A stretch of 64,000 bases of DNA, taken from positions 186,001-250,000 of the IMG/VR virus record IMGVR_UViG_3300032242_003291, one strand, 5' to 3'. This document shows, in pieces, positions 23 through 63,853 of the stretch (positions are counted from its first letter, which is position 1; each line of letters opens with the position of its first letter). The notes beneath the pieces are model-generated. The model was given only the letters and a program-made list of their open reading frames with translations, ran no database searches and had not been told where the DNA came from. The translations under genes were made by a program, and so were the position numbers.

Positions 23-54
23 CAAAGATAAGAACTTTTTTACAAACCGTCAAA
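23..54 (-). promoter_or_regulatory. Bacteroidota primary-sigma promoter (-33 TTTG / -7 TATCTTTG, 20-nt spacer)
   Basis: Minus strand reads TTTG-acggtttgtaaaaaagttct-TATCTTTG; drives a gene beyond the left edge. Confidence 0.8.
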
Positions 55-134
55 TCTTTTTTTCTGAGTTTGGATACCGAGTATCTTTCATCACCTATAA
101 GTTCCAAACTCATTACAAAGATATAAAAAACTTT

Positions 135-389
135 TTAATTAAACAACATCCATCCCAACTTATTTTGTTCTTGATATTGAGAATAAGTACATTTACGTAA
201 AGACTTATAATCAGGTCTTAATTTTACATGTTCAGGATATTTCTTTTCAGATTCAATCCTTTCTTTCATGATACGTTTATATGCTTCTTTCTTACTCGAA
301 GCCCATACATCGTTAAAACCACCACCAATCCAATTGAATAAATAAAGATATTCTCCTGTTGGACTTCTGAAAAGTTTTTCTTTTGTCAT
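135..389 (-). CDS. hypothetical early protein
   Basis: 84-aa ORF directly downstream of the promoter at 411-442. Confidence 0.75.
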   Translation of the reverse strand: MTKEKLFRSPTGEYLYLFNWIGGGFNDVWASSKKEAYKRIMKERIESEKKYPEHVKLRPDYKSLRKCTYSQYQEQNKLGWMLFN

Positions 390-410
390 ATTGTTTCTCT
401 ATTTGTTTCA

Positions 411-442
411 CAAAGATAAGAACTATTTCTGAATCCACCAAA
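411..442 (-). promoter_or_regulatory. Bacteroidota primary-sigma promoter
   Basis: TTTG-N20-TATCTTTG on the minus strand. Confidence 0.85.
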
Positions 443-517
443 CTTTTTTTTAAGTACAGGGTGGGAATTTTTCCAGTCTCCCACCCCGTGGCTTTTGAGT
501 ATTTTAGAATCAGAATA

Positions 518-549
518 CAAATATAGAAAGTATTTTTTACATCACCAAA
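518..549 (-). promoter_or_regulatory. Bacteroidota primary-sigma promoter
   Basis: TTTG-N20-TATATTTG on the minus strand, followed by a GC-rich hairpin at ~458-487 and no ORF. Confidence 0.7.
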
Positions 550-588
550 TTTTTTTTGAAAGATAGTATTTATTAAAAAATCTAATAC

Positions 589-717
589 ATGGCAAAAGCA
601 AAATCGTCAGGAGAATCAAGAAAGGTAACTTTCGGTAAAAGAAAAACAGGAGCAGCTAAAAAGACTTACAACAAACATTCTCCAAGACCAAAAGCTTACA
701 AAGGTCAAGGAAGATAA
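589..717 (+). CDS. small basic Lys/Arg-rich protein (42 aa, ends YKGQGR)
   Basis: Not in ORF track; MAKAKSSGESRKVTFGKRKTGAAKKTYNKHSPRPKAYKGQGR; TATTTAT at 567-573. Confidence 0.7.
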   Translation: MAKAKSSGESRKVTFGKRKTGAAKKTYNKHSPRPKAYKGQGR

Positions 718-753
718 TCTTCAAAACACAAATTAATTTGCTATATTTTTATC

Positions 754-1041
754 ATGTTAGATAAGAAAAGGAGAATCTTTCGCCTGATTGAAAATTATAT
801 CAACGATTATCAGGGTAACGCTGTACAAACTTTGTATGGTAAAGGAGCTCATATCAAAATTCATAACATAAATTTTTCAGTAACTCAAAAATCAATTTTG
901 ATGAAGGCCGTTATTATCTTAGGTGAATTAATCAACGAAGAAGTAATGGATAGGACTCTTGCTGATATACTAATTAACGACGCAATGACCTATTTTTATC
1001 CCGAATGTTCCGTAAAAACTTATATTAGATTTGATGTATAA
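754..1041 (+). CDS. hypothetical protein
   Basis: 95-aa ORF with A-rich initiation context. Confidence 0.7.
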   Translation: MLDKKRRIFRLIENYINDYQGNAVQTLYGKGAHIKIHNINFSVTQKSILMKAVIILGELINEEVMDRTLADILINDAMTYFYPECSVKTYIRFDV

Positions 1042-1043
1042 TT

Positions 1044-1075
1044 TTTGGTGAATTCACACAAAAATAATATCTTTG
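1044..1075 (+). promoter_or_regulatory. Bacteroidota primary-sigma promoter
   Basis: TTTG(1044-47)-N20-TATCTTTG(1068-75), ATG at 1080. Confidence 0.85.
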
Positions 1076-2897: not shown

Positions 2898-3047
2898 TAT
2901 TCTATTTTAGAATAAATATTACACATTCAAAGAAAAAGTGTCTTTTGGTCAGGATGGAAATAATTATTATTCTTTCAGAATAATAATAAGAATTAATAAA
3001 ATACTAAAAAAAAATTAAAAAACTAGTAATACTAGTTCTAGGGAATT

Positions 3048-3484: not shown

Positions 3485-3982
3485 TTATTTTCCTTTAATC
3501 ATTTCCATTGCATGTTTCAAAAACTCTTTTGCTCTTGGTGCAACATGTTCCATTCCATAAACCTTTTCGATGTCTTTAACTAATTCTTCACCGTGTTCGT
3601 TTTCTTTGTATAACTCGATGATTTTATCCATTGCGGTTCCACACTCTTTTTTAGTTTCGTCAAAATAGTTGTACGGTTTGAATCCTTTTAGGTGATTCAT
3701 AACGTCATACGCCAAATGTTCTCCACCATCTGAAACCTTTGGGTGTAATCTTAAAGTTTTTAACAATTCAAGTTTGTCAACTAGTCCGTGAACACCTTGT
3801 TTTCTTAATTTAACTCCATCGATATAGTCATCTGCATCACCATCACCCATAATTTCTTCTAATGTCTTAACATTTCCACCATGACAGAATTTTCTGTCAT
3901 CTTTTTGTTCTGACTGCTCAACCAAATACAGTTTTTGTATTTGTTGCTTTTCTGATTCTGTTATTTCAAATCTTTTTCCCAT
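3485..3982 (-). CDS. leader-bearing hypothetical protein
   Basis: MGKRFEITESEK...LVEQ; TATTTAT at 3987-3993; terminator at ~3428-3450. Confidence 0.8.
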   Translation of the reverse strand: MGKRFEITESEKQQIQKLYLVEQSEQKDDRKFCHGGNVKTLEEIMGDGDADDYIDGVKLRKQGVHGLVDKLELLKTLRLHPKVSDGGEHLAYDVMNHLKGFKPYNYFDETKKECGTAMDKIIELYKENEHGEELVKDIEKVYGMEHVAPRAKEFLKHAMEMIKGK

Positions 3983-4017
3983 AACAATAAATATATTGAA
4001 GTATTAAATTGTTTTTT

Positions 4018-4731
4018 TTACAAAATATCGTGTAAAAAAGAATTTTTCTTGGTTTCTGATAAATACTCTTTGGTAAATGAAAATGGGTCGTAAGGAATTA
4101 CGTTAAAAACTTTTTTATAATAACAATAAATCCTTTTTGCCGAGTCAAATTCATAAATTTGGTCAAATTTCAAAGGTCTTGTGGTGATAAATCGATTATT
4201 TTCAATTTTTTGACGAATTTTTTCACTATCGATTGAAGAATCCGATTTAATAAAACTTAAATTTTCTAAATCTTCCTTTAAATTTTCCATTCTAATAAAA
4301 TACTCAGGAATTCTACTATCAAAAGTCCATTTTGAAAAAAAATTGTAGTTAATATTATCAGTTTGATTAAATTTTGATAATTCCACTAAAGTTTTTCTTT
4401 TGATAAATGATTCCAATACCCATTCGTTAAACCTTTCTTTTATTTTTTGATAAATTGACTTTTCGATTACCACATCTCCGTATTGAGTTAACAAAAAAAC
4501 AGCAAAAATTCTATCATAAGGGTTCCTAACACTACAAATTAGTTTATAATTCGAGAATTCTTCAGGTATTTGATTAAAATGACTAGTATACCTCTCTTTC
4601 AAAGATATTTCATCATTTGTTTTCGAATTATAAACAAAAAAGTCATAATCGGATAAAATTTCTCTTGTAATTTTTGTACCACACCTTTCAGGTGCCCACC
4701 ATATAACATTATGTTTGTAAGATATGTTCAT
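4018..4731 (-). CDS. sulfotransferase (Sulfotransfer_2-like)
   Basis: PERCGT 5'-PSB-like loop, SVRNPYDR 3'-PB motif, FIRMENLKEDL. Confidence 0.75.
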   Translation of the reverse strand: MNISYKHNVIWWAPERCGTKITREILSDYDFFVYNSKTNDEISLKERYTSHFNQIPEEFSNYKLICSVRNPYDRIFAVFLLTQYGDVVIEKSIYQKIKERFNEWVLESFIKRKTLVELSKFNQTDNINYNFFSKWTFDSRIPEYFIRMENLKEDLENLSFIKSDSSIDSEKIRQKIENNRFITTRPLKFDQIYEFDSAKRIYCYYKKVFNVIPYDPFSFTKEYLSETKKNSFLHDIL

Positions 4732-4767
4732 ACTTTGGAAATATAATCTATTTATAGTAAAAAATAT

Positions 4768-5433
4768 ATGAAAAAATCATTCAAAAAATTTTGGTTACCT
4801 GTATTAGTAGGTTTCAGTCTTTTTATCTTGTCTTTCGTTGGTGCAAAAGCACAAGATGTTGTTGTTTTGAAACACACAAATTACACATCACATTTTAGTA
4901 AATCAAAACACTACCCAGTTATGGTTGAGTGGTGGATTACTAAAGCAAAAGCGGGTTGTGCAAATCAACTTGCAAGAAAAGACAACTTCAAACCTGACCC
5001 TTTATTGTTGAAAGAAACTGATTTAGCGGCAGACTACGTAGGTAGTGGTACTGATAGAGGTCATAATATGCCAGCGGCGGAAAACCAATGTCAGACTGCT
5101 ACAGTTCAAGACGAATGTTTTTACTTCTCAAACATGACACCACAATATCATTCACTAAATGCTGGTGATTGGAAAACATTAGAAGTTTTAGAAAGACAAA
5201 TTGCTAACGATAATGATTCAGTTCACGTTTGGTGTGGAAGTATTGGTGAAGCAAAGAAAATTGGAAAAGTCTCGGTTCCAACTGAATGTTGGAAAGTTAT
5301 TTACGTATTAAAAACTAAAGAATGGATGGCCTATGAGTTTAAGAACACAACTGATAAACCATCAGGGTTAAACTCTCATAAAGTAACTGTTGCAGATATT
5401 ACAAAATTAACAGGATTAAAATTCGTTAAATAA
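4768..5433 (+). CDS. exported DNA/RNA non-specific endonuclease (NucA/Serratia family)
   Basis: Signal peptide; DRGH motif, FYFSNMTPQ, LNAGDWKTLE, VPTECWKV. Confidence 0.9.
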   Translation: MKKSFKKFWLPVLVGFSLFILSFVGAKAQDVVVLKHTNYTSHFSKSKHYPVMVEWWITKAKAGCANQLARKDNFKPDPLLLKETDLAADYVGSGTDRGHNMPAAENQCQTATVQDECFYFSNMTPQYHSLNAGDWKTLEVLERQIANDNDSVHVWCGSIGEAKKIGKVSVPTECWKVIYVLKTKEWMAYEFKNTTDKPSGLNSHKVTVADITKLTGLKFVK

Positions 5434-5776: not shown

Positions 5777-6187
5777 TTATTTATTAAAAGAAATATTAAT
5801 TACTGTTGAGTCGTTTAATAAACCCCAATCTAATAATTTTTCATCTGGTCCGTCAGTTTCTAAAGTCACTCTTAACGCAGTTTCAAAAATGTCAGCATCT
5901 AACTTAATGGTGTTTCCTGAAGTTTGTACCCCTCTATTAACATAAACGCCATCGTTTACATTGAACATTAATGATGAATCACAAATACTACCACCATCAC
6001 CTCTTTCATTAGTATAAAAATGGATTTGCTTGTTATCAGTACCTGTCCATTCAATTGTTTTATCTTCAATTGTACTGTTAGGTGCTATCATTGTTTGGTC
6101 GGCAAGTTCAGGTGTATTTACAATACCTGAAATACCATCAACTTTAACAAAAAAGTCTGTGTTATTTCTTAAATTTATTTTTGCCAT
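5777..6187 (-). CDS. hypothetical beta-rich protein
   Basis: 136 aa; TATTTAT at 6203-6209. Confidence 0.75.
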   Translation of the reverse strand: MAKINLRNNTDFFVKVDGISGIVNTPELADQTMIAPNSTIEDKTIEWTGTDNKQIHFYTNERGDGGSICDSSLMFNVNDGVYVNRGVQTSGNTIKLDADIFETALRVTLETDGPDEKLLDWGLLNDSTVINISFNK

Positions 6188-6219
6188 ATTTTTGTTTAAT
6201 TAATAAATATCTACAAATT

Positions 6220-6455: not shown

Positions 6456-6740
6456 TTACTCTTCGTATTTTATATTCTCAAAATTTTTGTTAATATCATC
6501 CAAATTTTTATCTAGTCTTCCTTGTAATTCTGGATGTAATTTTTTCCCTGTTTTGAACATTGCAAGAAGTTCTTGCAGTTTATCCATTATTTCTTCAACA
6601 GTTTCTTCAACATCTTCGTTACCATTGCTAGTGTCTATTTGCATTGGTTGTGAATAAATATCCAAATCCATAGCAACAGCATTTAAGCCTTGTTCTTGTA
6701 ATTTTTTTAGTTGTAATTCTGTTAAAATATATTTAGCCAT
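6456..6740 (-). CDS. leader-bearing hypothetical protein
   Basis: MAKYILTELQLKKLQEQ. Confidence 0.8.
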   Translation of the reverse strand: MAKYILTELQLKKLQEQGLNAVAMDLDIYSQPMQIDTSNGNEDVEETVEEIMDKLQELLAMFKTGKKLHPELQGRLDKNLDDINKNFENIKYEE

Positions 6741-6749: not shown

Positions 6750-6761
6750 TATATTTATAAA
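6750..6761. promoter_or_regulatory. palindromic TATTTATAAATA, candidate bidirectional phage-class promoter
   Basis: Sits between divergent genes starting at 6740 and 6777 and gives TATTTAT on both strands. Confidence 0.6.
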
Positions 6762-6776
6762 TATAAAACAATACGT

Positions 6777-7586
6777 ATGAAAAACTTATTTTTGATTTTA
6801 GGAATAATTCCAATCTTGTCATTTGGACAAGTTTCCAATTGGAGAAGTAATCCACCTCAACAACACTCAACACAACAAAGGTCTGTTCCTTCTACACCGA
6901 CACCTTCAAGAAATGATAATGTAAGTTCTTGGAGAGCAACACCTCAACCTCAATCACCTCGAGAAAATAATAGACCAATTATTCGACAAAATAATATACC
7001 GTATCGTTACGGTAATCCTTACTATTACTATGGAACATATGGTTGGTATTATCCATCATATTACTATTGGTATGACCCATATGGATTTAGAAATAGAGGT
7101 CAGGTTTACATTTATGAAAATGGTAAATCAGATACTATCAGAACAACACCGACAAGATTTACTGTTGGTATTCAAAAGTCAAATGACATGTTAGGTGCTT
7201 GGTCAACAATTGGAAATGACGGATTTCTTATTTTAGATTACGTTACAACATACGAACAAGACAAATCCGATTTTTTCCCTTATGGAAAAATAACTCAAGT
7301 TGATTTCCCAATGGTCTCTGACTATGTTCAAAGAAATATATTTTACATAGGTGCTGGTAAAACTTTAGACCACAAATGGAGATTAAGTGCAAGTATTGGA
7401 TTCGGCAATGAAGTTGTTAGATATAGAGGTAAAGACGCAATTGGATACATTACATTTCCAAAATATTCAGGAAATTTTACAACAGTTAAACTTGGATTAA
7501 TTCGTAACTACAAAAAAGTATCTGCTAAGTTTGATTACGACCTAAGTAAAAAATATCTTTCTTTAGGATTAGGTGTAAATTTTTAA
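6777..7586 (+). CDS. exported protein, probable outer-membrane beta-barrel with low-complexity N-terminus
   Basis: Signal peptide, Pro/Gln/Tyr-rich linker, alternating beta strands, terminal LGLGVNF beta-signal. Confidence 0.6.
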   Translation: MKNLFLILGIIPILSFGQVSNWRSNPPQQHSTQQRSVPSTPTPSRNDNVSSWRATPQPQSPRENNRPIIRQNNIPYRYGNPYYYYGTYGWYYPSYYYWYDPYGFRNRGQVYIYENGKSDTIRTTPTRFTVGIQKSNDMLGAWSTIGNDGFLILDYVTTYEQDKSDFFPYGKITQVDFPMVSDYVQRNIFYIGAGKTLDHKWRLSASIGFGNEVVRYRGKDAIGYITFPKYSGNFTTVKLGLIRNYKKVSAKFDYDLSKKYLSLGLGVNF

Positions 7587-7920: not shown

Positions 7921-7989
7921 GATTACGATTTTACTTTTTTAAGATTAGGATTTTACTATTTTATAAGATATTTATAATAAACATTTTAT

Positions 7990-8568: not shown

Positions 8569-8593
8569 TCTAATCAATTAGTATTTATAATAG

Positions 8594-12036: not shown

Positions 12037-12054
12037 TATTATAAATACATCGTT

Positions 12055-13033: not shown

Positions 13034-13048
13034 ACCAATAAATACAAC

Positions 13049-14770: not shown

Positions 14771-14785
14771 TAAAGATAAATACCT

Positions 14786-16732: not shown

Positions 16733-16784
16733 CTTATATAAATACCTTTTAAATTAAAAATCCCTCGTAGTGAGGGATTTGTGG

Positions 16785-16895: not shown

Positions 16896-16915
16896 ATTAT
16901 TTTAATTGATAAATA

Positions 16916-20047: not shown

Positions 20048-20083
20048 ACAAATAAATATCCACAAAAATAAAAATGAAAAAAA

Positions 20084-22780: not shown

Positions 22781-22813
22781 AATAAATGTTTTATTATAAA
22801 TACATACGGAAAT

Positions 22814-24286: not shown

Positions 24287-24324
24287 TAACAATAAATATA
24301 CCGACCCATTTGTTTGATATAAAT

Positions 24325-24930: not shown

Positions 24931-24971
24931 AAAATTTCTTTATAATAAATATATTGTCAGACCCATTTGTT

Positions 24972-28399: not shown

Positions 28400-28848
28400 A
28401 TACTATTTTCTTTTATCCATTTTTTCATCCACAATGGTCCATACAAATATAACAACCACCATCCCGAAAAAGATAATCATTGAGTAGTCCATATTATCTT
28501 TTTTTGAATAGGTTAATAAATCCACTTATAGTTGAAAATACCAACACATAGTATAATCCAATTACAATCCATTTAACAATTTCCATAATATAATTTTTAC
28601 AAACATAGTATATTCCACAAAATTTTCCAAAAATTTTTTTTCTCGTTGGGTGAGTATAATAAAAGTGGGGGGTCATGTTCTTAAATAAGTTACCTATTGT
28701 TCTTAACTCAAGAGGTGATGCACTTAAATTGGAAATATATTTCTAAATTATTAAAATTAAATAATGACTTGTTATTTTTTAGGTTGTAAACATATAATAA
28801 TAATTTACAATTGGAAATATGTTTCTAATATTAAGTATATTTATTAGT

Positions 28849-30725: not shown

Positions 30726-30749
30726 AAAATTTGTTTAATATAAATATAA

Positions 30750-31184: not shown

Positions 31185-31222
31185 ATCAATAAATACAAAA
31201 TTTTTCCAGAAATTTTTTAATT

Positions 31223-31736: not shown

Positions 31737-31809
31737 AAAAAATATTTTATAATAAATATATCGAAAAGGTCATTTTTTTCCCAAAAATTTTTTTTGCGTA
31801 ACTCAAGGT

Positions 31810-32020: not shown

Positions 32021-32052
32021 TTTGGTTGTGTGAAAGCTATGTTGTATCTTTG
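32021..32052 (+). promoter_or_regulatory. Bacteroidota primary-sigma promoter, antisense to 32057..32503
   Basis: TTTG-N20-TATCTTTG. Confidence 0.8.
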
Positions 32053-32546: not shown

Positions 32547-32578
32547 TTTGGTTATATCATAAATACTACATACCTTTG
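32547..32578 (+). promoter_or_regulatory. Bacteroidota primary-sigma promoter
   Basis: TTTG-N20-TACCTTTG. Confidence 0.8.
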
Positions 32579-32682: not shown

Positions 32683-32714
32683 CAAAGGTACGTCTTTTTT
32701 CTGTAACTACCAAA
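32683..32714 (-). promoter_or_regulatory. Bacteroidota primary-sigma promoter convergent with 32547-32578
   Basis: TTTG-N20-TACCTTTG on the minus strand. Confidence 0.8.
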
Positions 32715-34825: not shown

Positions 34826-34862
34826 AGTGAATTAATTGGATAATCTAAAAGTATTTATTCAT

Positions 34863-35187: not shown

Positions 35188-35219
35188 TTTGATTCTCACA
35201 CCCTTTTTTCATACCTTTG
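35188..35219 (+). promoter_or_regulatory. Bacteroidota primary-sigma promoter
   Basis: TTTG-N20-TACCTTTG. Confidence 0.8.
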
Positions 35220-35538: not shown

Positions 35539-35582
35539 TAATAACTTAATATTCCCCGACAAAGTATATCCTATTTATCTAT

Positions 35583-39499: not shown

Positions 39500-39566
39500 T
39501 CCCCAAAAATAAATAAAAATAGTTTTTAATCAATAAAATGTTTTACCCTAAAAAGTATTTATTAAT

Positions 39567-40139: not shown

Positions 40140-40167
40140 AATAATAAATATCCTATATTTGAATTAG

Positions 40168-41672: not shown

Positions 41673-41692
41673 ACAATATAAATATAGAATAA

Positions 41693-43369: not shown

Positions 43370-44474
43370 GATTATAAATATCTGTAATCATTTTTAATGC
43401 CTGAGCAATTATTTGATGCATGTCGTAATACACATATGTTGCCAATCTGCCACCAAATATAACGTTTTTAAGACCCTTAGTTAGTTCGTGATACCTATTA
43501 TAGACCTGAGTGTTTTTATCGTCTCTAATTGGGTAATATGGTTCGTTATGACCATCGTATTCTTCAGGGAACTCGTAACTTATGATTGTACCTTTTTGAC
43601 CTTGATAGTCAAACCATTTATGTTCTAATATTCTGGTAAAAAGAGTTGTGGAATCTGTATAATTAACCACAGGATTACCTTGGAAATTACCTTCATCTAT
43701 CGTAACATTGGTCCAACTCAAACTTCTGTAATCTAACTTACCAAACTGATAATCAAAATATCTGTCTATCGGTCCTGTATATATTATTTTCTCTGCAAGA
43801 TTGTCATAATATTCACGGTTATCGAAATAATCTTGACCTAAAGAAACATCAATACCTTCTAACATTTTTTCAAATATTTGAGTATATCCACCTATAGGTA
43901 TTCCAGTATATTTGTCATTAAAGTAATTACTATCCCACGTGAATCTTATAGGTAATCTTTTAATAATTGATGCTGGTAATTCACTACAGGGTCTACCCCA
44001 TTGTTTAGTGGTATAGCCATTGATAAGTTTTTCGTAAATATCATCACCAACAATTGACCTTGCTTGTTCTTCGAGATTTTTAACTTCGCCTTTATACCTT
44101 TGTTTTTTGATGATTTCTTTTGCATCTTCTTCGGTTTTAACACCCCACAGTTGGTTAAAGGTCCACATGTTGAATGGGAGTGTGAACATTTCTCCGTTGT
44201 AATTCGCAATAACATTATGACTATATTGTTTAAATTCAGCAAATTGATTTATGTAATCCCAAATATATTTTTCATTAGTGTGGAATATATGTGCCCCGTA
44301 TCTGTGAACATGAATACCATTAACATTTTCAGTGTAACAATTTCCTCCAAGAGTGTTTCTTTTATCAATGACTAAACAAGATTTACCTCTCTTAGTAAGT
44401 TCATAAGCACAAACGGAACCATAAGGTCCCGCTCCTATTATGAGGTAATCATATTTTTTATCGATTAAAATCAT
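43353..44474 (-). CDS. glf: UDP-galactopyranose mutase
   Basis: IIGAG, GGNC, HRYGAHIFH, YTGPID, TRILEHK, EPYYP, GRLATYVYYDMHQ. Confidence 0.97.
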   Translation of the reverse strand: MILIDKKYDYLIIGAGPYGSVCAYELTKRGKSCLVIDKRNTLGGNCYTENVNGIHVHRYGAHIFHTNEKYIWDYINQFAEFKQYSHNVIANYNGEMFTLPFNMWTFNQLWGVKTEEDAKEIIKKQRYKGEVKNLEEQARSIVGDDIYEKLINGYTTKQWGRPCSELPASIIKRLPIRFTWDSNYFNDKYTGIPIGGYTQIFEKMLEGIDVSLGQDYFDNREYYDNLAEKIIYTGPIDRYFDYQFGKLDYRSLSWTNVTIDEGNFQGNPVVNYTDSTTLFTRILEHKWFDYQGQKGTIISYEFPEEYDGHNEPYYPIRDDKNTQVYNRYHELTKGLKNVIFGGRLATYVYYDMHQIIAQALKMITDIYNHESLS

Positions 44475-47398: not shown

Positions 47399-47425
47399 CT
47401 ATTAGTTTTTACAAAGGTAATAAAT

Positions 47426-47455
47426 AAAAAACCCCTAATCAAATGTTAGGGGTTT
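47426..47455 (-). terminator. intrinsic terminator
   Basis: aaaaacccctaa-loop-ttaggggttt. Confidence 0.7.
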
Positions 47456-48761: not shown

Positions 48762-48793
48762 CAAAGATAAGACCTTTATACGAATCCACCAAA
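48762..48793 (-). promoter_or_regulatory. Bacteroidota primary-sigma promoter
   Basis: TTTG-N20-TATCTTTG. Confidence 0.85.
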
Positions 48794-50136: not shown

Positions 50137-50168
50137 CAAAGATAAGGAGACTATTTCAAACCGCCAAA
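50137..50168 (-). promoter_or_regulatory. Bacteroidota primary-sigma promoter
   Basis: TTTG-N20-TATCTTTG; downstream leader TATTCACAAAAC shared with 48762. Confidence 0.85.
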
Positions 50169-50592: not shown

Positions 50593-50651
50593 ATGTTATT
50601 TTTGAAAAAAACTAATTGAAATTTTTTTATAAGTCAAATCTATTTATTACT

Positions 50652-53287: not shown

Positions 53288-53337
53288 ATGTCTTTATTTA
53301 GATTACAAATATAGTAAATTTATTTGAAACAACAAAA

Positions 53338-54542: not shown

Positions 54543-54574
54543 CAAAGATAAACATTTTTTCTTAAATCAACAAA
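54543..54574 (-). promoter_or_regulatory. Bacteroidota primary-sigma promoter
   Basis: TTTG-N20-TATCTTTG. Confidence 0.8.
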
Positions 54575-55642: not shown

Positions 55643-55674
55643 GTCTATTTTATTTATAAATATTCAATAAAACA

Positions 55675-55705: not shown

Positions 55706-55716
55706 AAGGCAAAAAA

Positions 55717-56480
55717 GGTTGAGAATACACCAAATTGAGAGAGTCTTTACAGGAGATTATTTTGATTCCTCCGATTTCCACTTCCTTTTGAGAAGTAACT
55801 CTCAGTCACGGTCAATTAGATTAACCAATCCTTAAGTCGTAATATACTCTATTCTTACTCATCACTCTTCGAGGTTGCCACCCCAATTAATCCTTGCGAG
55901 ATTAGAGAACTTTCAAAACAATCGTATCGGGTTTGGGACCCTCTACGGCCATGAACAACTCATGACTAAGTAGTGACCTGTCTACCACGACTGATGAACA
56001 CTTTTCCTTGTATTATTAATTGATTTGTTAGAATCCAAATTTTAACAAAGGTTGTGATTTGTGGATGATAGATGTAGCGGTTCATCAAACCAGCCATCTC
56101 ATCTTTTGAACGAGACGATACTGAACTACACCTTGAAGTCTCCCGACCTCCATATCTCAAGTTTACTTCATAACTCCTACCTTGGTAGGTGAAGAGTAAG
56201 GAGAACAACAGCACCACCTGTACGAACCCATACCTTTCGGTTTTAAGTCTACTCTAATATTGAACTCCGTAATTGTATAGTTGGATGACCATACTTCTTA
56301 CAACAGCTCTACGAGTTATTCTTATTGGAGTTCCCTCCTCAACCAAACGACCCACATCGCTTGGTCACCCAACCACTTTCCCTACAGTGTTACCCTCAGT
56401 ACTAAAGGTCAGATGATATCCCGCTTGTCTACTCGAGCTCCCTTTCGGAAGCCGCAACCGTTCCAATCAAGAACGAATCA
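55717..56480 (-). ncRNA. large structured ncRNA (~760 nt), probably GOLLD class
   Basis: GC-richer tract without credible CDS; own promoter (56626-56657) and boxA-like site; long-range helices 56336-56344/55717-55725 and 56217-56222/55748-55753; next to a tRNA; 5' end approximate. Confidence 0.6.
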
Positions 56481-56625: not shown

Positions 56626-56657
56626 CAAAGATAAGATTGTTTTTGGAAACAATCAAA
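56626..56657 (-). promoter_or_regulatory. Bacteroidota primary-sigma promoter for the large ncRNA
   Basis: TTTG-N20-TATCTTTG; AGTTCTTTGAA at ~56536-56546 downstream. Confidence 0.85.
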
Positions 56658-56805: not shown

Positions 56806-56837
56806 CAAAGATAAGAAGAACTTTTCAATTCGTCAAA
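56806..56837 (-). promoter_or_regulatory. Bacteroidota primary-sigma promoter
   Basis: TTTG-N20-TATCTTTG. Confidence 0.85.
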
Positions 56838-56893
56838 TCTTTTTTTAAAAATAGGGAACCTCGATTTTACGACCATAGTCAACCCATTCTTAG

Positions 56894-56965
56894 TTGCGAG
56901 GGATGGATTCGAACCACCGACCTAAAGGTTATGAGCCTTCCGAGCTACCTCTGCTCTACCTCACG
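56894..56965 (-). tRNA. tRNA-Met(CAT), initiator type
   Basis: Cloverleaf with CAT anticodon, TTCGAAT T-loop, C1:A72 mismatch, A11:U24; no encoded CCA. Confidence 0.92.
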
Positions 56966-57131: not shown

Positions 57132-57163
57132 CAAAGGTAAGTGATAGTTTTGACACTGTCAAA
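57132..57163 (-). promoter_or_regulatory. Bacteroidota primary-sigma promoter for the tRNA unit
   Basis: TTTG-N20-TACCTTTG; leader hairpin 57077-57120; AGTTCTTTAA at 57053-57062. Confidence 0.85.
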
Positions 57164-59829: not shown

Positions 59830-61002
59830 TTAAACTGCTGCTAATGCCGATTTAGCCACTTGACTACCAAATAGTGATGAGAAAAAGTCTCCCACAGGAT
59901 TTGATGATGATGTTGATTGTGTTGTTGATTGTGAAGGTTGTGTTTGTTGTTGAGTTCCTTGAGGTGTTTCTGTACCAAAACTATCTTTAAAATATTGTTG
60001 TGCTTGTGGTGTCTGATTATATTGTGCAACTTTAGACTCAAACTTATCTTGACCCATTTTTTCAACTGCTTCCTCAGGTCCTACAAAATTTCCTATTCCC
60101 ATCCAATCTAAAAAACCCAACCACCATTTGGTTTGTCTTGCTAAAGCTCTAACTGATTTGTTTCTACCCATCAACTGTGGCATGCCACCAAATAAAGTTT
60201 TCCAAGATAAAGCACCTTTAGTTGTCCTATATGATGTAAAGAGTCCTCCCGCTTCTTTGGACATTTTAATTAAATTTTCTAAGTTTTTAACTTGGTCAGC
60301 TTTGCTCAGTCTCAATATACCAGCACCACCCGCAGGAATTCCTTTAATTTTTGCCGCTAAATCAACACCAGCAGTTCTTATAGCCGCTCCTTTAGTTGCT
60401 CCTTTTTCAAATAATTCAATCCATTGTAATATTGTGTTTTTTAACCCTTTAAATGGTCCCATCGGCATTTTTTCGATGAAACCTTTCATTTTACTTCCAA
60501 TTCTACCCATTCCCTCTGTAAATTTACCAATAATTCCACCACCTTTAGTAAGTTTTTCAAGTTCAGCTGCCGCTTCTACAGATTTACCTGCTTCAGATAA
60601 TTTTAACACTCCCTCCAAAGCTTTGGCACTCGGTGCTCCAAGTTTTAATGCCCCCATCACAGGTTTTGCAACAATATCACCAATATATGGAACCGCAGAC
60701 ACTAAAGATAAAAATCCAAATAACTTATCTCCTTGAGAGATGTAAGAAATTCCATTAACTAAATCTACAACACCAGTTGGGTCAAAAATTCCAACAATAT
60801 CACCCAATGTATTATACCAATGACTTTCATTTAATTTTTTGGCTTTTTTTGGATACAAAACTTTTAAGAATTCTACAACAAATTCTTTTTCGTTAGTTGA
60901 AAATTTTTCCCAATTTTCAGTTGCTAATTTCCTATTATTTTCTTTTGAAATGTTTTCTTGAATTACTGCAAGTTGTTTTGTGGATATAATAATTTCCGCC
61001 AT
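59830..61002 (-). CDS. pre-toxin TG (PT-TG)-like domain protein
   Basis: LGDIVGIFDPTGVVDLVNG...QGD...LSLVSAVPYIGD; variant leader; TATTTAT at 61017-61023. Confidence 0.65.
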   Translation of the reverse strand: MAEIIISTKQLAVIQENISKENNRKLATENWEKFSTNEKEFVVEFLKVLYPKKAKKLNESHWYNTLGDIVGIFDPTGVVDLVNGISYISQGDKLFGFLSLVSAVPYIGDIVAKPVMGALKLGAPSAKALEGVLKLSEAGKSVEAAAELEKLTKGGGIIGKFTEGMGRIGSKMKGFIEKMPMGPFKGLKNTILQWIELFEKGATKGAAIRTAGVDLAAKIKGIPAGGAGILRLSKADQVKNLENLIKMSKEAGGLFTSYRTTKGALSWKTLFGGMPQLMGRNKSVRALARQTKWWLGFLDWMGIGNFVGPEEAVEKMGQDKFESKVAQYNQTPQAQQYFKDSFGTETPQGTQQQTQPSQSTTQSTSSSNPVGDFFSSLFGSQVAKSALAAV

Positions 61003-61033
61003 TTTTATTTTTCTTTATAAATATCCAAGAAAC

Positions 61034-61059: not shown

Positions 61060-61911
61060 TTATAAACCTAATTCTAATTGTTTGTTCAAATCAACAAAAT
61101 GTTGTACTCTTTCTTTTGCAATTTTGGTATAAGCATCACTTAATTCAATCCCAATCCACCTTCTGTTCCATATTTCAGCAGCACAAATACTTGTACCTGA
61201 ACCTGTAAATGGGTCTAACACAATATCATTTTTATATGATAGTATTTTGATGGCTTTGACTGGAATATCCATTGAGAATGTTGCCTTAGTCAATTGCTTG
61301 GTATCTGCAAAGTAATCCCATTGACCATAAACTAAATCCATAAATTCTTTCTTATCATCTTCTTGATATACATTTTTCTTTTTTACTGCACCGTCCTCCT
61401 GCTCGACGTCAATAATTTGTCCTTTCCATTGAGGTTCACCTTTAATTTTCTTAATGTGTGTTTTTTTGTAAGCCAACAATACACATTCTTTTGGATTATA
61501 TATGTATGGTGCCGATGGTGACATCCAAGAACCCCACGCTGTGGTTTTACTCCTATGTGGAGATTCTTCTTCCAAATCAACTATACCATAAAACTTATAA
61601 CCAATGTTTTTCATAATCTGCCAAAGTTCTGATACCATTAAAATTCTCCCACCTTTATCCTGTCTGTTAATTTCATAAGGAATGTTTAGGGCTATCCTCC
61701 CATCATCTTTCAATACTCTGTACGCCTCTCTTAACCAATTAGCACTGAAAACTTTGTATTGTTCAAATTCTATATCATCATCAAATGTATCATATTTGAT
61801 TCCAACACCGTAAGGTGGTGATGTTACGATTAGGTCTACGGAAGACTCAGGCATTTTTGCCATGACTTCAATACAATCCCCATTAATTACTTTACCTATA
61901 TAATCTTCCAT
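61060..61911 (-). CDS. orphan beta-class amino DNA methyltransferase (SPPY, likely N4-cytosine)
   Basis: DLIVTSPPY (motif IV) before VLDPFTGSGT (motif I); start re-assigned. Confidence 0.9.
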   Translation of the reverse strand: MEDYIGKVINGDCIEVMAKMPESSVDLIVTSPPYGVGIKYDTFDDDIEFEQYKVFSANWLREAYRVLKDDGRIALNIPYEINRQDKGGRILMVSELWQIMKNIGYKFYGIVDLEEESPHRSKTTAWGSWMSPSAPYIYNPKECVLLAYKKTHIKKIKGEPQWKGQIIDVEQEDGAVKKKNVYQEDDKKEFMDLVYGQWDYFADTKQLTKATFSMDIPVKAIKILSYKNDIVLDPFTGSGTSICAAEIWNRRWIGIELSDAYTKIAKERVQHFVDLNKQLELGL

Positions 61912-61916
61912 TATTT

Positions 61917-62150
61917 TTATTTTACTATTACTACGTCGCCCTTCCAAATGACTTCATTTGCCTGACAACTCATATGATGTTTATCCACTCGTTCACCTCT
62001 TTTATTATCCCAAACTAAATCTCTTGTGGTGTGTAAAGGTATCTCAACTATTACGTTAGATGCTGTCCATTCTACGCCATCAATTAGAATTCTCCAAAAC
62101 ATGTGATTATCTTCACACAAGGTATTCCATCTTATTTTAACGTCTATCAT
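61917..62150 (-). CDS. hypothetical protein
   Basis: 77 aa, operonic. Confidence 0.7.
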   Translation of the reverse strand: MIDVKIRWNTLCEDNHMFWRILIDGVEWTASNVIVEIPLHTTRDLVWDNKRGERVDKHHMSCQANEVIWKGDVVIVK

Positions 62151-62548
62151 AACTTACCTTCTTGCTTTAGTTGTTCTCTGATTTTGGTTGCGGAGATTTC
62201 ACTAACTTCTTGTGGTGGTATATGTTCGATAACATCATAACCGACTCCCCTTCCGAAATTAACTGACTCTATATCTGGGATTTTAATAACTTCAACCCTT
62301 CCTTCACTGATTAAATCCAACAATTCAACAGTTATGTTTGAATGAACTTGATTGGCTGTGAAAGGATTTTTTTCATCAGGTTCAACATCCCTAATACAAA
62401 TTAAAACATTTTTTCCTTGTTCTAATCTTTGGTCTATTAACCATCTATGACCTGCGTGCCATGGCTGCCATCTTCCAATAAACATTGAATATTGTTTACC
62501 GACGCTGTTTTTTAATTTTGGGTCTCCCTCTACGTGTATTTTTTCCAT
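62147..62548 (-). CDS. small HxGH nucleotidyltransferase (cytidylyltransferase/NadM-like)
   Basis: FIGRWQPWHAGH, KNPF, ISATKIR. Confidence 0.85.
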   Translation of the reverse strand: MEKIHVEGDPKLKNSVGKQYSMFIGRWQPWHAGHRWLIDQRLEQGKNVLICIRDVEPDEKNPFTANQVHSNITVELLDLISEGRVEVIKIPDIESVNFGRGVGYDVIEHIPPQEVSEISATKIREQLKQEGKL

Positions 62549-62549
62549 A

Positions 62550-62993
62550 TTAATATTCGTACGCCAGAATTGTTCTAGCACATTCTTGAACCGTTTTATT
62601 ATCAGTATTGATATCTACGAAAAGCTCAGTTGGAGCTTCATAGTTTTCTACAAAGAAATTTTCACGTCCTCTCACCTCTGTTGTATGAACGTAAAATTCA
62701 ACAAGATTATCTCCCATTTTTTTCTTGAAGTTCTCTCTTTGGTCTTTATACGGTGAAACTAACGACACAATAACATTATGTCCTTTAGATACTAGATATT
62801 GTGAAAGTTGTTGAGCCAACTCGATATTCTTTCTTCTACCTTGTTCCGAATAATCTTTATTATCAAATAATTCTCTGATGTCATCACCATCAACATTGAA
62901 TGAATTTTGAGTTAAAAGATTATTACAAATGTATTTTGCAATTGTAGTTTTTCCTGCTCCAGGTTGTCCTGTTAGCCAATAAATTTTAGCCAT
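62550..62993 (-). CDS. cysC: adenylyl-sulfate (APS) kinase
   Basis: WLTGQPGAGKTT, VDGDDIR, GRRKNI, VSLVSPY, YEAP. Confidence 0.9.
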   Translation of the reverse strand: MAKIYWLTGQPGAGKTTIAKYICNNLLTQNSFNVDGDDIRELFDNKDYSEQGRRKNIELAQQLSQYLVSKGHNVIVSLVSPYKDQRENFKKKMGDNLVEFYVHTTEVRGRENFFVENYEAPTELFVDINTDNKTVQECARTILAYEY

Positions 62994-63216
62994 TGTTTTC
63001 TAAGTTTTTTATTTTTCTATCTAAATAGAATGCCGCTTTCTTGAGGTCTTCCAATTCTTTTGCAGGGTCTTTCTTACCCGCTCTTGCAACATATTTAACT
63101 ACATTGAATAGGTACGCATCATAATCTAATCCCCAAGCTTCACAGACTTTTATTACTTCGTATGGATTATCTGCCCCACCATAGTGAGAAGGTCCATTTA
63201 CCATTTCTTTACTCAT
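62986..63216 (-). CDS. DUF3310-like phage protein
   Basis: VNGPSHY...NVVKYVARAGKK...EDLKKAAFYL. Confidence 0.85.
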   Translation of the reverse strand: MSKEMVNGPSHYGGADNPYEVIKVCEAWGLDYDAYLFNVVKYVARAGKKDPAKELEDLKKAAFYLDRKIKNLENNG

Positions 63217-63321
63217 TTTTTATTCCCCCATTTTTTTTCCATGTACTCAATATACCTGTCAGTTTTATTACCGTTGTATAAGAAATATACAAAATAATAA
63301 TCCCAAATCCAGTCTAATTTT

Positions 63322-63609
63322 TTAAGAAACTTTTTCATTTTTCTTCTTTTTCTTTTCTTTATCTTTTTGGTATTGTGCCGCGGTGTTTAAAGAAACTGCT
63401 GCCGCCTCATCGATTAAAACTTTATCAGTTTCGTGATTAGGATTAACTTCCGTTTCAACAACTTTCTTTCCTTTTGATAACTTCCACTCTGTTTTGGAAA
63501 TATATTGCCAGCTGCTGCCGACCATATTCATTGCAGTTTTTTCATCAACTCTTTTGATGTCACCTACATCTACGCCTTTAGACGCTCTGATTGCTTTGAT
63601 ACACTTCAT
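63322..63609 (-). CDS. hypothetical protein
   Basis: 95 aa, basic tail. Confidence 0.7.
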   Translation of the reverse strand: MKCIKAIRASKGVDVGDIKRVDEKTAMNMVGSSWQYISKTEWKLSKGKKVVETEVNPNHETDKVLIDEAAAVSLNTAAQYQKDKEKKKKKNEKVS

Positions 63610-63817
63610 TGGTTTTTTCCTCCATGTTTTTTTTGTTATTTATAATAGATAGAATCTCTTCATCAGTTTTTCCCTGAATGAATAGTTCATATATTTCTAC
63701 GCTTTCATCATCTTCGAAAGTGAGTCCATCACTTTTTCCGTAATACTTTCTTAAACCGCCTTCGCTCAAGGCTCTATAACTTCTTTCAAAGTCTACATAT
63801 CGTTGATTGAATCCCAT
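63578..63817 (-). CDS. hypothetical early protein
   Basis: Promoter at 63822-63853. Confidence 0.75.
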   Translation of the reverse strand: MGFNQRYVDFERSYRALSEGGLRKYYGKSDGLTFEDDESVEIYELFIQGKTDEEILSIINNKKNMEEKTNEVYQSNQSV

Positions 63818-63821
63818 ACAA

Positions 63822-63853
63822 CAAAGATAGTAAAATTATAATTCAGAGTCAAA
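63822..63853 (-). promoter_or_regulatory. Bacteroidota primary-sigma promoter
   Basis: TTTG-N20-TATCTTTG. Confidence 0.85.

What the first reader, a model, noticed from the sequence alone, without database searches (positions are those of the whole stretch)
23..63853. Two mutually exclusive promoter classes partition the genes
Seen: exact Bacteroidota sigma promoters (TTTG-N20-TAnnTTTG) at 23, 411, 518, 1044, 32021, 32547, 32683, 35188, 48762, 50137, 54543, 56626, 56806, 57132 and 63822. None of the roughly 14 CDSs directly behind a TAnnTTTG element carries the [IL]-x-E leader. A different motif, TATTTAT, lies 3-40 nt upstream of about 30 starts, including most operon-leading leader genes and both homing-type endonucleases. 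It is the reverse complement of the T4 late promoter core (TATAAATA). Gaps as short as 4 nt to the start codon imply nearly leaderless mRNAs. Inference: an early host-sigma class and a late class read by a phage-specific factor. Caveat: a 7-mer of A/T is common in this genome, so only positional enrichment counts.
Basis: partly seen in the sequence, partly recalled or inferred. Interest (0 to 1): 0.8.

Follow-up and report, generated by a model that had tools for sequence, protein, structure and literature searches.

The report
Two promoter classes in a jumbo phage
This 317-kb uncultured freshwater Bacteroidota phage carries host-type promoters plus a second, clade-conserved promoter-like word (TATTTAT) placed so close to start codons that many mRNAs should have no leader, and the phage encodes its own sigma factor that may read it.

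Summary
All 15 listed TTTG-N20-TAnnTTTG sites exist (23 matches against 4.8 expected). TATTTAT is the most common 7-mer upstream of starts: 32 of 115 genes against 3.9±1.9 in shuffles, and only in the sense orientation.

The gap to ATG falls in two groups, 4-5 nt and 12-18 nt. The same arrangement recurs in about 1 Mb from over 100 related viral contigs, with hundreds of TATTTAT-N4-5-ATG cases. Host-type TAnnTTTG shows the same gap-4 peak. In Flavobacterium that element lies 4-5 nt from the transcription start, so both words behave as -10-like elements and many transcripts should be leaderless.

Outside the window the phage encodes a conserved 265-aa sigma-70-family factor. A host-type promoter precedes it in the source phage and in most of 24 relatives. 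Host-type promoters head the sigma, primase, denV, tRNA-Met and GOLLD genes. TATTTAT heads the tail fibres, the MKIIITE-leader proteins and both homing endonucleases.

Not shown: transcription start sites, timing, and which factor reads TATTTAT. Strict mutual exclusivity is not significant (3 genes carry both, 5.7 expected). The link to the T4 late promoter is only a string coincidence. Verdict: a new variant of a phage sigma cascade.

The parts
23..54 (-). Host-type promoter (TTTG-N20-TATCTTTG) firing leftward out of the window, towards a 730-nt non-coding stretch
411..442 (-). Host-type promoter, 21 nt before ATG of gene 135-389
518..549 (-). Host-type promoter in tandem, upstream of the 411 promoter
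1044..1075 (+). Host-type promoter, gap 4 to ATG of gene 1080-1556 (predicted leaderless)
28600..28631 (-).
32021..32052 (+). Host-type promoter at the edge of the gene-poor stretch 32.0-34.8 kb; target unclear
32547..32578 (+). Host-type promoter, face to face with the one at 32683
32683..32714 (-). Host-type promoter, about 175 nt upstream of gene 32057-32503
35188..35219 (+). Host-type promoter, 16 nt before in-frame ATG 35236 of ORF 35137-35538
47412..47443 (-). Host-type promoter (TACCTTTG), gap 14 to gene 47194-47397, heading the glycosyltransferase operon; TATTTAT 47420-47426 lies in its spacer (one of three genes with both words)
48762..48793 (-). Host-type promoter, gap 21 to gene 48000-48740
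50137..50168 (-). Host-type promoter, gap 21 to gene 49645-50115
53306..53336 (-). Host-type promoter (N19), gap 18 to gene 53006-53287
54543..54574 (-). Host-type promoter, gap 18 to gene 54000-54524 (Band_7 domain)
56626..56657 (-). Host-type promoter upstream of the GOLLD RNA
56806..56837 (-). Host-type promoter between tRNA-Met and GOLLD
57132..57163 (-). Host-type promoter upstream of tRNA-Met (56893-56965)
63822..63853 (-). Host-type promoter, gap 4 to gene 63578-63817 (predicted leaderless)
567..573 (+). TATTTAT, gap 15, gene 589-717
2912..2918 (-). TATTTAT, gap 14, gene 2589-2897, which heads the operon with leader/PG-binding gene 1546-2589
3987..3993 (-). TATTTAT, gap 4, gene 3485-3982
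4749..4755 (+). TATTTAT, gap 12, nuclease gene 4768-5433
6203..6209 (-). TATTTAT, gap 15, gene 5777-6187
6752..6763 (.). Overlapping pair TATTTATAAATA in a 36-nt divergent spacer; it reads TATTTAT towards gene 6777-7586 (+, gap 18) and towards gene 6456-6740 (-, gap 16)
7969..7975 (+). TATTTAT, gap 14, HNH endonuclease gene 7990-8568
8582..8588 (+). TATTTAT, gap 5, gene 8594-9691
12041..12047 (-). TATTTAT, gap 4, leader gene 11443-12036 (MRIIITESQ)
13038..13044 (-). TATTTAT, gap 4, leader gene with revised start 13033
14776..14782 (-). TATTTAT, gap 5, leader gene 14162-14770
16738..16744 (-). TATTTAT, gap 5, gene 15866-16732, directly after a terminator
16909..16915 (-). TATTTAT, gap 13, gene 16785-16895
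20052..20058 (-). TATTTAT, gap 4, gene 18896-20047 (383 aa, phrog_22713)
22796..22802 (-). TATTTAT, gap 15, gene 22298-22780, after a terminator
24292..24298 (-). TATTTAT, gap 5, leader gene 22847-24286, after a terminator
24945..24951 (-). TATTTAT, gap 14, gene 24373-24930
28838..28844 (+). TATTTAT, gap 4, GIY-YIG-type endonuclease gene with revised start 28849
30740..30746 (-). TATTTAT, gap 14, gene 29892-30725
31189..31195 (-). TATTTAT, gap 4, gene 30750-31184, after a terminator
31752..31758 (-). TATTTAT, gap 15, gene 31275-31736 (IRLTENDL leader)
34852..34858 (+). TATTTAT, gap 4, leader gene 34863-35183
35572..35578 (+). TATTTAT, gap 4, glycosyltransferase gene 35583-36281
39504..39515 (-). 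Overlapping TATTTAT (gap 9) and TATTTTTG (host-like, gap 4) before gene 38549-39499; class ambiguous
39556..39562 (+). TATTTAT, gap 4, gene 39567-39884
40144..40150 (-). TATTTAT, gap 4, ORF 39885-40139 (GTG start, so the start call is uncertain)
41678..41684 (-). TATTTAT, gap 5, gene 40584-41672
43374..43380 (-). TATTTAT, gap 4, gene 42965-43369; an internal promoter at the end of the glycosyltransferase operon
50641..50647 (+). TATTTAT, gap 4, gene 50652-51041
55656..55662 (-). TATTTAT, gap 13, gene 54605-55642, directly after terminator 55678-55705
61017..61023 (-). TATTTAT, gap 14, gene 59830-61002, after a terminator-like hairpin
55716..56133 (-). GOLLD RNA (Rfam RF02032, 325 bits), lying between host-type promoter 56626-56657 and terminator 55678-55705
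56893..56965 (-). tRNA-Met (CAT), downstream of host-type promoter 57132-57163

Best explanation
The window is part of a 317-kb uncultured freshwater Bacteroidota jumbo phage that uses two kinds of -10-like promoter element.

Class 1 is the standard Bacteroidota primary-sigma promoter (TTTG at -33, TAnnTTTG at -7). Host RNA polymerase would read it from the start of infection. It heads the phage's own sigma-factor operon, the primase/exonuclease genes, denV, small genes, tRNA-Met and the GOLLD RNA.

Class 2 is (A/G)TATTTAT(A/T), often with a T-run about 12-17 nt upstream and no -35/-33 word. I infer that it is read by host core polymerase carrying the phage's conserved 265-aa sigma-70-family factor, and that it serves a middle/late regulon. 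That regulon includes tail fibres, a lectin-domain protein, the many 'MKIIITE...' leader proteins, homing endonucleases and glycosyltransferases.

For both classes, transcription is predicted to start at an A 5-6 nt after the element. In about half of the promoters that A is the A of the ATG, so the mRNA is leaderless. In the rest there is an A-rich leader of about 8-13 nt.

Shown: the motifs, their orientation, their spacing, their conservation across a large clade, the sigma gene and its host-type promoter, and the gene content of each class.

Inferred: the transcription start sites, which factor reads TATTTAT, and the timing.
For: Enrichment and orientation
-.
- An unbiased positional 6-mer scan over 1768 ORF starts finds only two motif families: TATTTAT words (z about 41) and TATCTTTG words (z 13-16).

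Clade-wide conservation
- 83 of 154 leader-gene starts in over 100 independent viral contigs have TATTTAT. 67 of these have a gap of exactly 4-5 nt.
- In about 1.05 Mb of related loci, TATTTAT is followed by ATG and an ORF at gap 4 (133), gap 5 (123), gap 6 (55) and gap 7 (22). A second hump lies at gaps 11-19. The reverse-complement control gives about 5 per gap.

Same geometry as the host element
- TAnnTTTG peaks at gap 4 (100 cases; 54 of the 202 full -33/-7 forms).
- In F. johnsoniae the -7 element spans T-12 to G-5, with 4-5 nt to the start site (PMC6847099).
- In the long-gap class a conserved T followed by AAA sits exactly where the ATG sits in the short-gap class.

Promoter context
- 20% of short-gap sites directly follow a terminator-like hairpin with a T-run, against 2% of controls.
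- Divergent gene pairs with 36-67 nt spacers carry one TATTTAT in each direction.
- In an alignment of seven contigs, the motif and its spacing are invariant next to a hairpin with compensatory changes.

Factor
- Sigma70 regions r1.2, r2 and r4 in L127:7568-8365.
- More than 120 clusters at 81% identity or above, all 265 aa, on contigs up to 294 kb.
- The sigma operon lies behind TAnnTTTG in the source phage and in most of 24 relatives, and those sigma-flanking stretches show no TATTTAT-N4-5-ATG.
- Canonical sigma-70 promoters are not enriched overall (121 vs 106.6±10.1, 134 vs 106.7±7.9, 100 vs 99.5±9.7), so TATTTAT is the only other candidate target.

Gene content and orthologues
-.
- The promoter class is conserved at orthologous genes of a second, 294-kb phage.
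Against: - No RNA data exist. No RNA run was listed, so start sites and timing are untested.
- Sigma regions 2.3/2.4 and 4.2 look canonical (SigA-like, TKERVRQIK). That would predict a TTGACA/TATAAT-type promoter rather than a TATTTAT promoter without a -35 element.
- Only 146 of 317 kb was read and most proteins have no family hit, so another factor (gp55-like, or a phage polymerase) cannot be excluded.
- The two classes are interleaved along the genome rather than in blocks. Three genes carry both words, and exclusivity is not significant.
- Some TATTTAT-headed genes (RuvC operon, N6 methyltransferase, homing endonucleases, glycosyltransferases) are not classical late genes.
- Not every TATTTAT is a promoter. 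One sits in the loop of the terminator after the sigma gene.
- Related loci were fetched with the leader pattern and include close relatives, so the counts are not independent events.
Confidence: 0.6

Rival explanations
1. TATTTAT is a real promoter element, but something other than the 265-aa sigma reads it. Candidates are a host alternative sigma, host sigma-A redirected by a phage appropriator (as with T4 MotA/AsiA), a gp55-like -10-only factor, or a phage RNA polymerase encoded in the unread 171 kb.
For: The sigma's DNA-contact regions look canonical and retain region 4.2, although the promoters have no -35 word. More than half of the genome was not read and most large proteins have no family hit. 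T4 late promoters with only a -10 element use a truncated sigma, not an RpoD-like one (established knowledge).
Against: No other sigma, gp55-like gene or polymerase domain appeared in the 146 kb examined. The 265-aa sigma is a highly conserved core gene of the clade, is itself behind host-type promoters, and no third motif class exists that it could serve. In F. johnsoniae T-7 and G-5 are nearly invariant, and TATTTAT lacks both, which argues against host sigma-A.
Confidence: 0.22
2. TATTTAT is not a promoter but an RNA-level signal. It would be an endonuclease processing site, or an AU-rich translation-initiation element, lying in longer transcripts that start further upstream.
For: The word is sense-strand specific and lies at a fixed short distance from AUG. 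It also occurs in tight spacers inside operons without terminators, for example 12041, 14776 and 43374. Bacteroidota do not use Shine-Dalgarno sequences and rely on A/U-rich leaders (PMC6847099).
Against: There are two discrete distance classes about 10 nt apart, unlike a ribosome-binding element. The geometry matches that of the bona fide host -7 element. Many sites follow a terminator by about 20 nt or sit in 36-nt divergent spacers, where no other promoter fits. The long-gap class has a conserved T/A start-like dinucleotide at a fixed offset.
Confidence: 0.08
3. The enrichment is a by-product of A/T-rich intergenic composition and of duplicated terminator-promoter cassettes, with no specific function.
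For: Total window enrichment is modest (68 vs 47). Some neighbouring sites share longer flanks, for example 24286 and 24930. The related loci include near-duplicates.
Against: Dinucleotide shuffles of the same upstream stretches give 3.9±1.9 against 32 observed. Permuted A/T words and the reverse complement show no peak. The flanks are otherwise unconserved across 317 unique sites. The word is kept at orthologous genes between diverged phages while the surrounding sequence changes.
Confidence: 0.03

Closest known systems
Bacteroidota primary-sigma (sigma-ABfr) promoters, -33 TTTG / -7 TAnnTTTG
   Same: Class 1 sites match the consensus exactly, with 19-21 nt spacing. Class 2 occupies the same position relative to the predicted start. 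If aligned T-12 A-11, it shares T-12, A-11, T-8 and T-6.
   Different: Class 2 has A where T-7 would be and A/T where G-5 would be. Both positions are nearly invariant in F. johnsoniae. Class 2 also has fixed T-10 and T-9 and no -33 TTTG. Host mRNAs mostly have leaders longer than 10 nt, whereas the phage often places the element 4-5 nt from ATG.
Phage T4 late promoters (TATAAATA, read by gp55 with gp33 and the gp45 clamp)
   Same: Both are A/T-only, -10-type elements with no -35 element. Both sit in front of virion genes and homing endonucleases in a large phage whose proteins carry [IL]-x-E-type N-terminal leaders.
   Different: The sense-strand word here is TATTTAT(A/T), not TATAAATA. The T4 word shows no positional enrichment. 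The factor found is an RpoD-like sigma with regions 1.2, 2 and 4, not a truncated gp55. No gp55, gp33 or gp45 genes were seen in the part of the genome that was read.
Sigma cascades of Bacillus phages (SPO1 gp28, then gp33/34)
   Same: A phage-encoded sigma-70-family protein is expressed from a host-type promoter and redirects host core polymerase to a different promoter consensus on later genes.
   Different: The host phylum and the consensus are different. The promoters have no -35 element, only one phage sigma has been found so far, and many transcripts are predicted to be leaderless.
Promoters of jumbo-phage multisubunit RNA polymerases (phiKZ, AR9)
   Same: Both are short A/T-rich elements without a -35 element, lying just upstream of the start site in a jumbo phage.
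   Different: Those are read by phage-encoded polymerases. No polymerase subunit was detected in the 146 kb examined here, and a sigma factor implies use of the host core enzyme.
Leaderless mRNAs (for example lambda cI from PRM; common in Actinobacteria, Deinococcus and archaea)
   Same: The predicted 5' end is at the A of the AUG, there is no room for a ribosome-binding site, and the start codons are AUG.
   Different: Here it would be a systematic, clade-wide feature of two promoter classes in phages of a phylum whose own mRNAs are mostly leadered. It has not yet been shown by 5'-end mapping.

Membership tests
Bacteroidota sigma-A -33/-7 promoter | TAnnTTTG element with TTTG 19-21 nt upstream | tested here: met
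   23 matches against 4.8 expected; 17 have exact N20 spacing
Bacteroidota sigma-A -33/-7 promoter | Located upstream of genes or RNAs in the sense orientation | tested here: met
   The gap-4 peak to ATG is seen for 54 of 202 full forms in related loci. In the window these promoters head tRNA-Met and GOLLD.
Bacteroidota sigma-A -33/-7 promoter | Transcription start 4-5 nt after the G; recognised by host sigma-A | not testable with these tools
   No RNA run was listed. The spacing rule is taken from PMC6847099.
T4-type late promoter | TATAAATA on the non-template (sense) strand at -10 | tested here: not met
   The sense word is TATTTAT. ATAAATA occurs upstream of 10 starts against 32 for TATTTAT, and its gap profile is flat.
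T4-type late promoter | No -35 element | tested here: met
   A position matrix of 317 + 163 unique sites shows only a T-run at -17..-12 from the motif.
T4-type late promoter | gp55-like truncated sigma with gp33 and a sliding clamp | tested here: inconclusive
   None was seen by Pfam or PHROGs in contig 166-312 kb. 171 kb was not read, and many proteins have no family hit.
Phage sigma-70-family cascade (SPO1-like) | Phage-encoded sigma-70-family protein | tested here: met
   L127:7568-8365 has Sigma70 r1.2, r2 and r4. It is RpoD/RpoS-like but below the equivalog cut-offs. Its best PDB match is SigA, E=1.5e-49.
Phage sigma-70-family cascade (SPO1-like) | The sigma gene itself is expressed from a host-type promoter | tested here: met
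   TAnnTTTG precedes the DUF6576-sigma pair in the source phage, in most of 24 relatives, and in L155. This is motif evidence only.
Phage sigma-70-family cascade (SPO1-like) | The phage sigma recognises the second promoter class, with a temporal switch | not testable with these tools
   This needs in vitro transcription or an infection time course.
Leaderless mRNA | 5' end at (or within 1-2 nt of) the AUG | not testable with these tools
   Inferred from the 4-5 nt gap and from the host element's spacing to the start site.
Leaderless mRNA | AUG start codon and no room for a ribosome-binding site | tested here: met
   In the window, 14 of 15 gap-4/5 starts are ATG. After start refinement there are 18 such starts, 17 of them ATG. 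The single GTG start at 40139 is doubtful.

The most novel reading that the evidence does not exclude
A large, uncultured clade of freshwater Bacteroidota phages (up to about 320 kb) shares a dedicated late expression system. A conserved RpoD-like phage sigma would read TATTTAT promoters that lack a -35 element and start transcription on the A of the start codon. This would give a regulon of truly leaderless mRNAs, many of which encode proteins with the shared N-terminal leader M-K-I-I-I-T-E. It would be an orthogonal sigma/promoter pair and a systematic use of leaderless translation in a phylum that does not use Shine-Dalgarno pairing.
Probability: 0.45. Interest if true: 0.75.

Novelty: new variant of a known kind. 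Interest (0 to 1): 0.62.

Why it matters
If the model is right, it gives a simple sequence rule for a big, unannotated clade of environmental jumbo phages whose proteins mostly have no known relatives. The rule would mark transcription starts, correct start codons and sort genes into temporal classes. Two start codons in this window were already corrected in this way.

The model also proposes a testable sigma/promoter pair that could be orthogonal to the host's in Bacteroidota, where genetic parts are scarce. And it predicts widespread leaderless translation in phages of a phylum that initiates translation without Shine-Dalgarno pairing, which bears on how those ribosomes select start codons.

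Tried and rejected
Searches that gave nothing
- Megablast and tblastn of window DNA and of a 383-aa protein against GenBank phages: no match. tblastn with the sigma finds only hits of 41% identity or less, so no cultured relative or published transcriptome can be used.
- RNA runs: none listed. Read laying was therefore not used and start sites could not be mapped.
- The search for related loci with an alignment of leader proteins failed, because no conserved 7-10 column block was found. It was replaced by a degenerate DNA pattern.
- Literature searches for TATTTAT, for Bacteroidota phage sigma factors and for late promoters found nothing relevant.
- Rfam on the gene-poor stretch 31.9-35.7 kb and on the non-coding stretch left of the window: nothing. 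ARAGORN found no tRNA in the latter.

Tests with weak or negative results
- Canonical sigma-70 (TTGACA/TATAAT) scan: no clear enrichment (121 vs 107, 134 vs 107, 100 vs 99.5), and no such word appears in the positional scan. A third, canonical promoter class was rejected.
- A search for a -35/-33 partner of TATTTAT found only a T-run, which is partly made of terminator tails.
- Strict mutual exclusivity was tested and is not significant.
- Functional sorting by PHROGs and Pfam: most proteins have no hit. The Atlas gave only weak leads, apart from a ConA-like lectin domain.
- Equating the motif with the T4 late promoter was rejected on strand grounds.

Full report
SOURCE AND SETTING

The window is bases 186,001-250,000 of IMGVR_UViG_3300032242_003291. 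This is a 317,259-bp viral contig found in freshwater and lake metagenomes. An almost identical 318,359-bp contig exists in ENA. G+C is about 31%. GenBank phages hold no near relative. Most proteins have no Pfam or PHROG match.

CHECK OF THE OBSERVATION

Host-type promoters. All 15 TTTG-N20-TAnnTTTG coordinates are exact. With N17-21 spacing there are 23 matches against 4.76±2.1 expected.

TATTTAT. The word is only mildly over-represented in the whole window (68 vs 47). Its position is what stands out.
- 32 of 115 predicted starts have it in sense orientation in the 40 nt upstream. Dinucleotide shuffles of those same stretches give 3.9±1.9, with a maximum of 11 in 2000 shuffles.
- The antisense word occurs 10 times.
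- TATTTAT is the most frequent 7-mer upstream of starts.
- A test that needs no gene calls (TATTTAT, a gap, then ATG and an ORF of at least 60 aa) gives sharp peaks at gaps 4-5 and 13-16. It gives nothing for the reverse complement or for permuted words.
- After start refinement, 33 window genes have the word 3-25 nt upstream. These include the HNH gene and the GIY-YIG gene, whose start moves to ATG 28849.

ANATOMY OF THE MOTIF

The core is (A/G)TATTTAT(A/T). No -35 or -33 word accompanies it. The only upstream feature is a T-run 12-17 nt before the core, and part of that is the tail of an intrinsic terminator.

The gap to ATG falls into two groups. In the window, 15 sites have a gap of 4-5 nt and 14 have a gap of 12-18 nt.

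In the long-gap class, a conserved T followed by AAA lies at exactly the offset where the ATG lies in the short-gap class. That is what a transcription start on an A 5-6 nt after the element would produce.

THE SIGNAL BELONGS TO A LARGE CLADE

The pattern says nothing about upstream DNA.
- 83 of the 154 matched gene starts carry TATTTAT. The gap is 4 nt in 40 cases and 5 nt in 27.
- Over the about 1.05 Mb fetched, TATTTAT is followed by ATG and an ORF at gap 4 (133 times), gap 5 (123), gap 6 (55) and gap 7 (22). A second hump lies at gaps 11-19. The control gives about 5 per gap. Roughly 250 of the short-gap cases are genes that were not used to fetch the loci.
- An unbiased positional 6-mer scan over 1768 ORF starts returns only two motif families: sub-words of TATTTAT (z about 41) and sub-words of TATCTTTG (z 13-16).
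- Seven orthologous upstream regions keep the word and its 4-nt gap invariant, next to a hairpin that shows compensatory changes.

WHY IT IS A PROMOTER ELEMENT

(a) The bona fide host element TAnnTTTG has the same geometry. In the related loci it peaks at gap 4 to ATG (100 cases; 54 of the 202 full -33/-7 forms). In the window it lies at gap 4-6 or at gap 14-21.

(b) In Flavobacterium johnsoniae the -7 element occupies T-12 to G-5, and the start site is 4-5 nt downstream (PMC6847099). TAnnTTTG-N4-ATG should therefore start on the A of the ATG, and TATTTAT-N4/5-ATG by analogy.

(c) 20% of short-gap TATTTAT sites directly follow a terminator-like hairpin with a T-run, against 2% of controls. Examples in the window are 55642, 24286, 22780 and 31184.

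(d) Divergent gene pairs separated by only 36-67 nt carry one TATTTAT in each direction (6740/6777 and 39499/39567).

A ribosome-binding or RNA-processing signal is harder to reconcile with two discrete distance classes and with these contexts. I keep it as a minor rival.

THE FACTOR

I walked the contig with exact-protein look-ups. This covered 166-312 kb.

At about 277.4-278.2 kb lies a 265-aa protein with Sigma70 regions 1.2, 2 and 4.
- It is RpoD/RpoS-like but below every equivalog cut-off.
- Its best solved relatives are SigA of Firmicutes. Region 3 is shortened. Region 2.3 and region 4.2 (TKERVRQIK) are largely canonical, while region 2.4 carries substitutions (YAVWWVRQSILQS against YATWWIRQAITRA in SigA).
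- It is a conserved core gene. More than 120 90%-identity clusters have at least 81% identity, all are 265 aa long, and they lie on contigs up to 294 kb.
- It is the second gene of a pair with a DUF6576 gene. That pair is preceded by TAnnTTTG in the source phage, in most of 24 relatives and in a second 294-kb phage. The 151 kb of sigma-flanking DNA from relatives shows no TATTTAT-N4-5-ATG.

No other sigma, gp55-like protein or polymerase subunit appeared in the 146 kb read. However, 171 kb is unread and many large proteins are unannotated. Canonical sigma-70 promoters are not enriched. By elimination, TATTTAT is the only candidate target for this sigma. This is an inference, not a demonstration.

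GENE CONTENT OF THE CLASSES

Host-type promoters head:
- the sigma operon;
- denV (gap 4);
- the primase (gap 4) and the exonuclease;
- a 295-aa gene and several small genes;
- tRNA-Met and the GOLLD RNA.

TATTTAT heads:
- the three-gene tail-fibre operon just right of the window;
- a 721-aa protein with a ConA-like lectin domain, and its neighbours, just left of the window;
- the leader proteins (11 of 19 leader genes, odds ratio 5, p=0.0016);
- both homing endonucleases;
- glycosyltransferases, an N6 methyltransferase, and a 732-aa gene with a RuvC-like gene.

The operon holding the SbcC-like gene has both elements in tandem, TATATTTGtgaaTATTTATtaatATG; the SbcD-like gene lies just upstream, outside it. 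The promoter class is the same at orthologous genes of the second jumbo phage, although the surrounding intergenic sequence differs. This fits an early versus middle/late division but does not prove timing.

- 'Mutually exclusive' is descriptive only. In 99.8 kb, 40 genes have TATTTAT, 22 have TAnnTTTG and 3 have both, against 5.7 expected (p=0.19). About 60% of genes have neither.
- The classes are interleaved along the genome rather than in blocks.
- The T4 comparison holds for architecture (a -10-type element with no -35) but not for sequence. The sense-strand word is not TATAAATA.
- Not every TATTTAT is a promoter. The copy after the sigma gene lies in a terminator loop.

A PLAUSIBLE ALIGNMENT OF THE TWO ELEMENTS (INFERENCE)

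Take TATTTAT(A/T) as T-12 A-11 T-10 T-9 T-8 A-7 T-6 W-5, and the host element as T-12 A-11 n n T-8 T-7 T-6 G-5. The two then differ at the two positions (-7 and -5) that are nearly invariant in the host. That would be enough to separate the two regulons.

LIMITS

- No RNA data are available.
- Gene starts come from my own heuristic caller. This is partly offset by the test that needs no gene calls.
- The related loci were chosen through the leader pattern and include close relatives, so counts are not independent events.
- The sigma-to-motif assignment and the timing are inferred.

COMPONENT CONFIDENCES

- The two motif classes are real: about 0.95.
- TATTTAT is a -10-like promoter element with the start 5-6 nt downstream: about 0.8.
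- It is read with the 265-aa sigma: about 0.55.
- It serves a middle/late class: about 0.65.

Noticed in passing
window 55716-56133 (-), transcript probably about 56621-55680: A GOLLD RNA (Rfam RF02032, 325 bits, full model). It is framed by host-type promoters (56626-56657, 56806-56837) and an intrinsic terminator (55678-55705), next to tRNA-Met(CAT) at 56893-56965. It lies in a 1.6-kb stretch without genes.
   Followed up: partly
window, about 25 genes (e.g. 11443-12036, 18479-18832, 22847-24286, 34863-35183); L003-L122: Unrelated proteins share only an N-terminal leader, M-K-[IY]-I-[IL]-T-E-[SQ]-Q or ...IRLTE[SN]DL..., as shown by alignment A1. Codons vary synonymously (Ser as AGT or TCN), so selection acts on the peptide. 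The leader recurs in at least 120 stretches of IMG/VR contigs. It may be a prohead-protease or packaging signal of the [IL]-x-E type.
   Followed up: partly
window 32547-32578 (+) and 32683-32714 (-): Two full host-type promoters face each other. The predicted transcripts would overlap by about 95 nt. They lie at the edge of a stretch that is richer in G+C and poor in genes (32.5-34.8 kb). That stretch has only doubtful ORFs and no Rfam match.
   Followed up: partly
L158:10256-10990 (contig about 185.4-186.1 kb, just left of the window): A 730-nt non-coding stretch with three TATCTTTG elements and a tRNA-like segment (ggttgaggtagctcagttg...ggttcgattccactcccaaccac). Neither ARAGORN nor Rfam calls it.
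   Followed up: partly
L154:17150-17220 (contig about 286.3 kb): A tandem arrangement, TATATTTGtgaaTATTTATtaatATG, lies in front of the operon that holds the SbcC-like gene. A host-type element and TATTTAT sit on one gene, which suggests expression in both phases.
   Followed up: no
L127:8395-8425 and L155:10835-10860: The TATTTAT after the sigma gene lies in the loop of a conserved hairpin (ggtgTATTTATtaagtacacc). This is a terminator-like structure, not a promoter, and serves as a caution against counting every copy.
   Followed up: partly
window 4018-4731, 9653-10117, 13081-13566 (upstream regions): A variant TATATTTC (host-like, with C in place of the final G) lies 6, 4 and 14 nt before three starts that have neither standard motif. 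These may be weak host-type promoters.
   Followed up: no
window 42965-47397 and 35583-37124; L157 (contig 292-312 kb): Large sets of sugar-modification genes: UDP-galactopyranose mutase, several GT2 and GT4 glycosyltransferases, DegT aminotransferase, hexapeptide acyltransferases and DUF6625. This is unusual in extent for a phage.
   Followed up: no
window 13081-13566; L127:14745-14927, 16527-17444: Host-like accessory genes in the phage: a cyclophilin-type PPIase (read from the N-terminal sequence only), an Hc1 histone-like protein, a full DnaJ, thioredoxin, glutaredoxin and pirin.
   Followed up: no
window 26758-28158: A run of short, overlapping ORFs that share a repeated peptide (NKDRFPH..L..LG). 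It looks like a tandem family of small paralogues without their own promoters.
   Followed up: no
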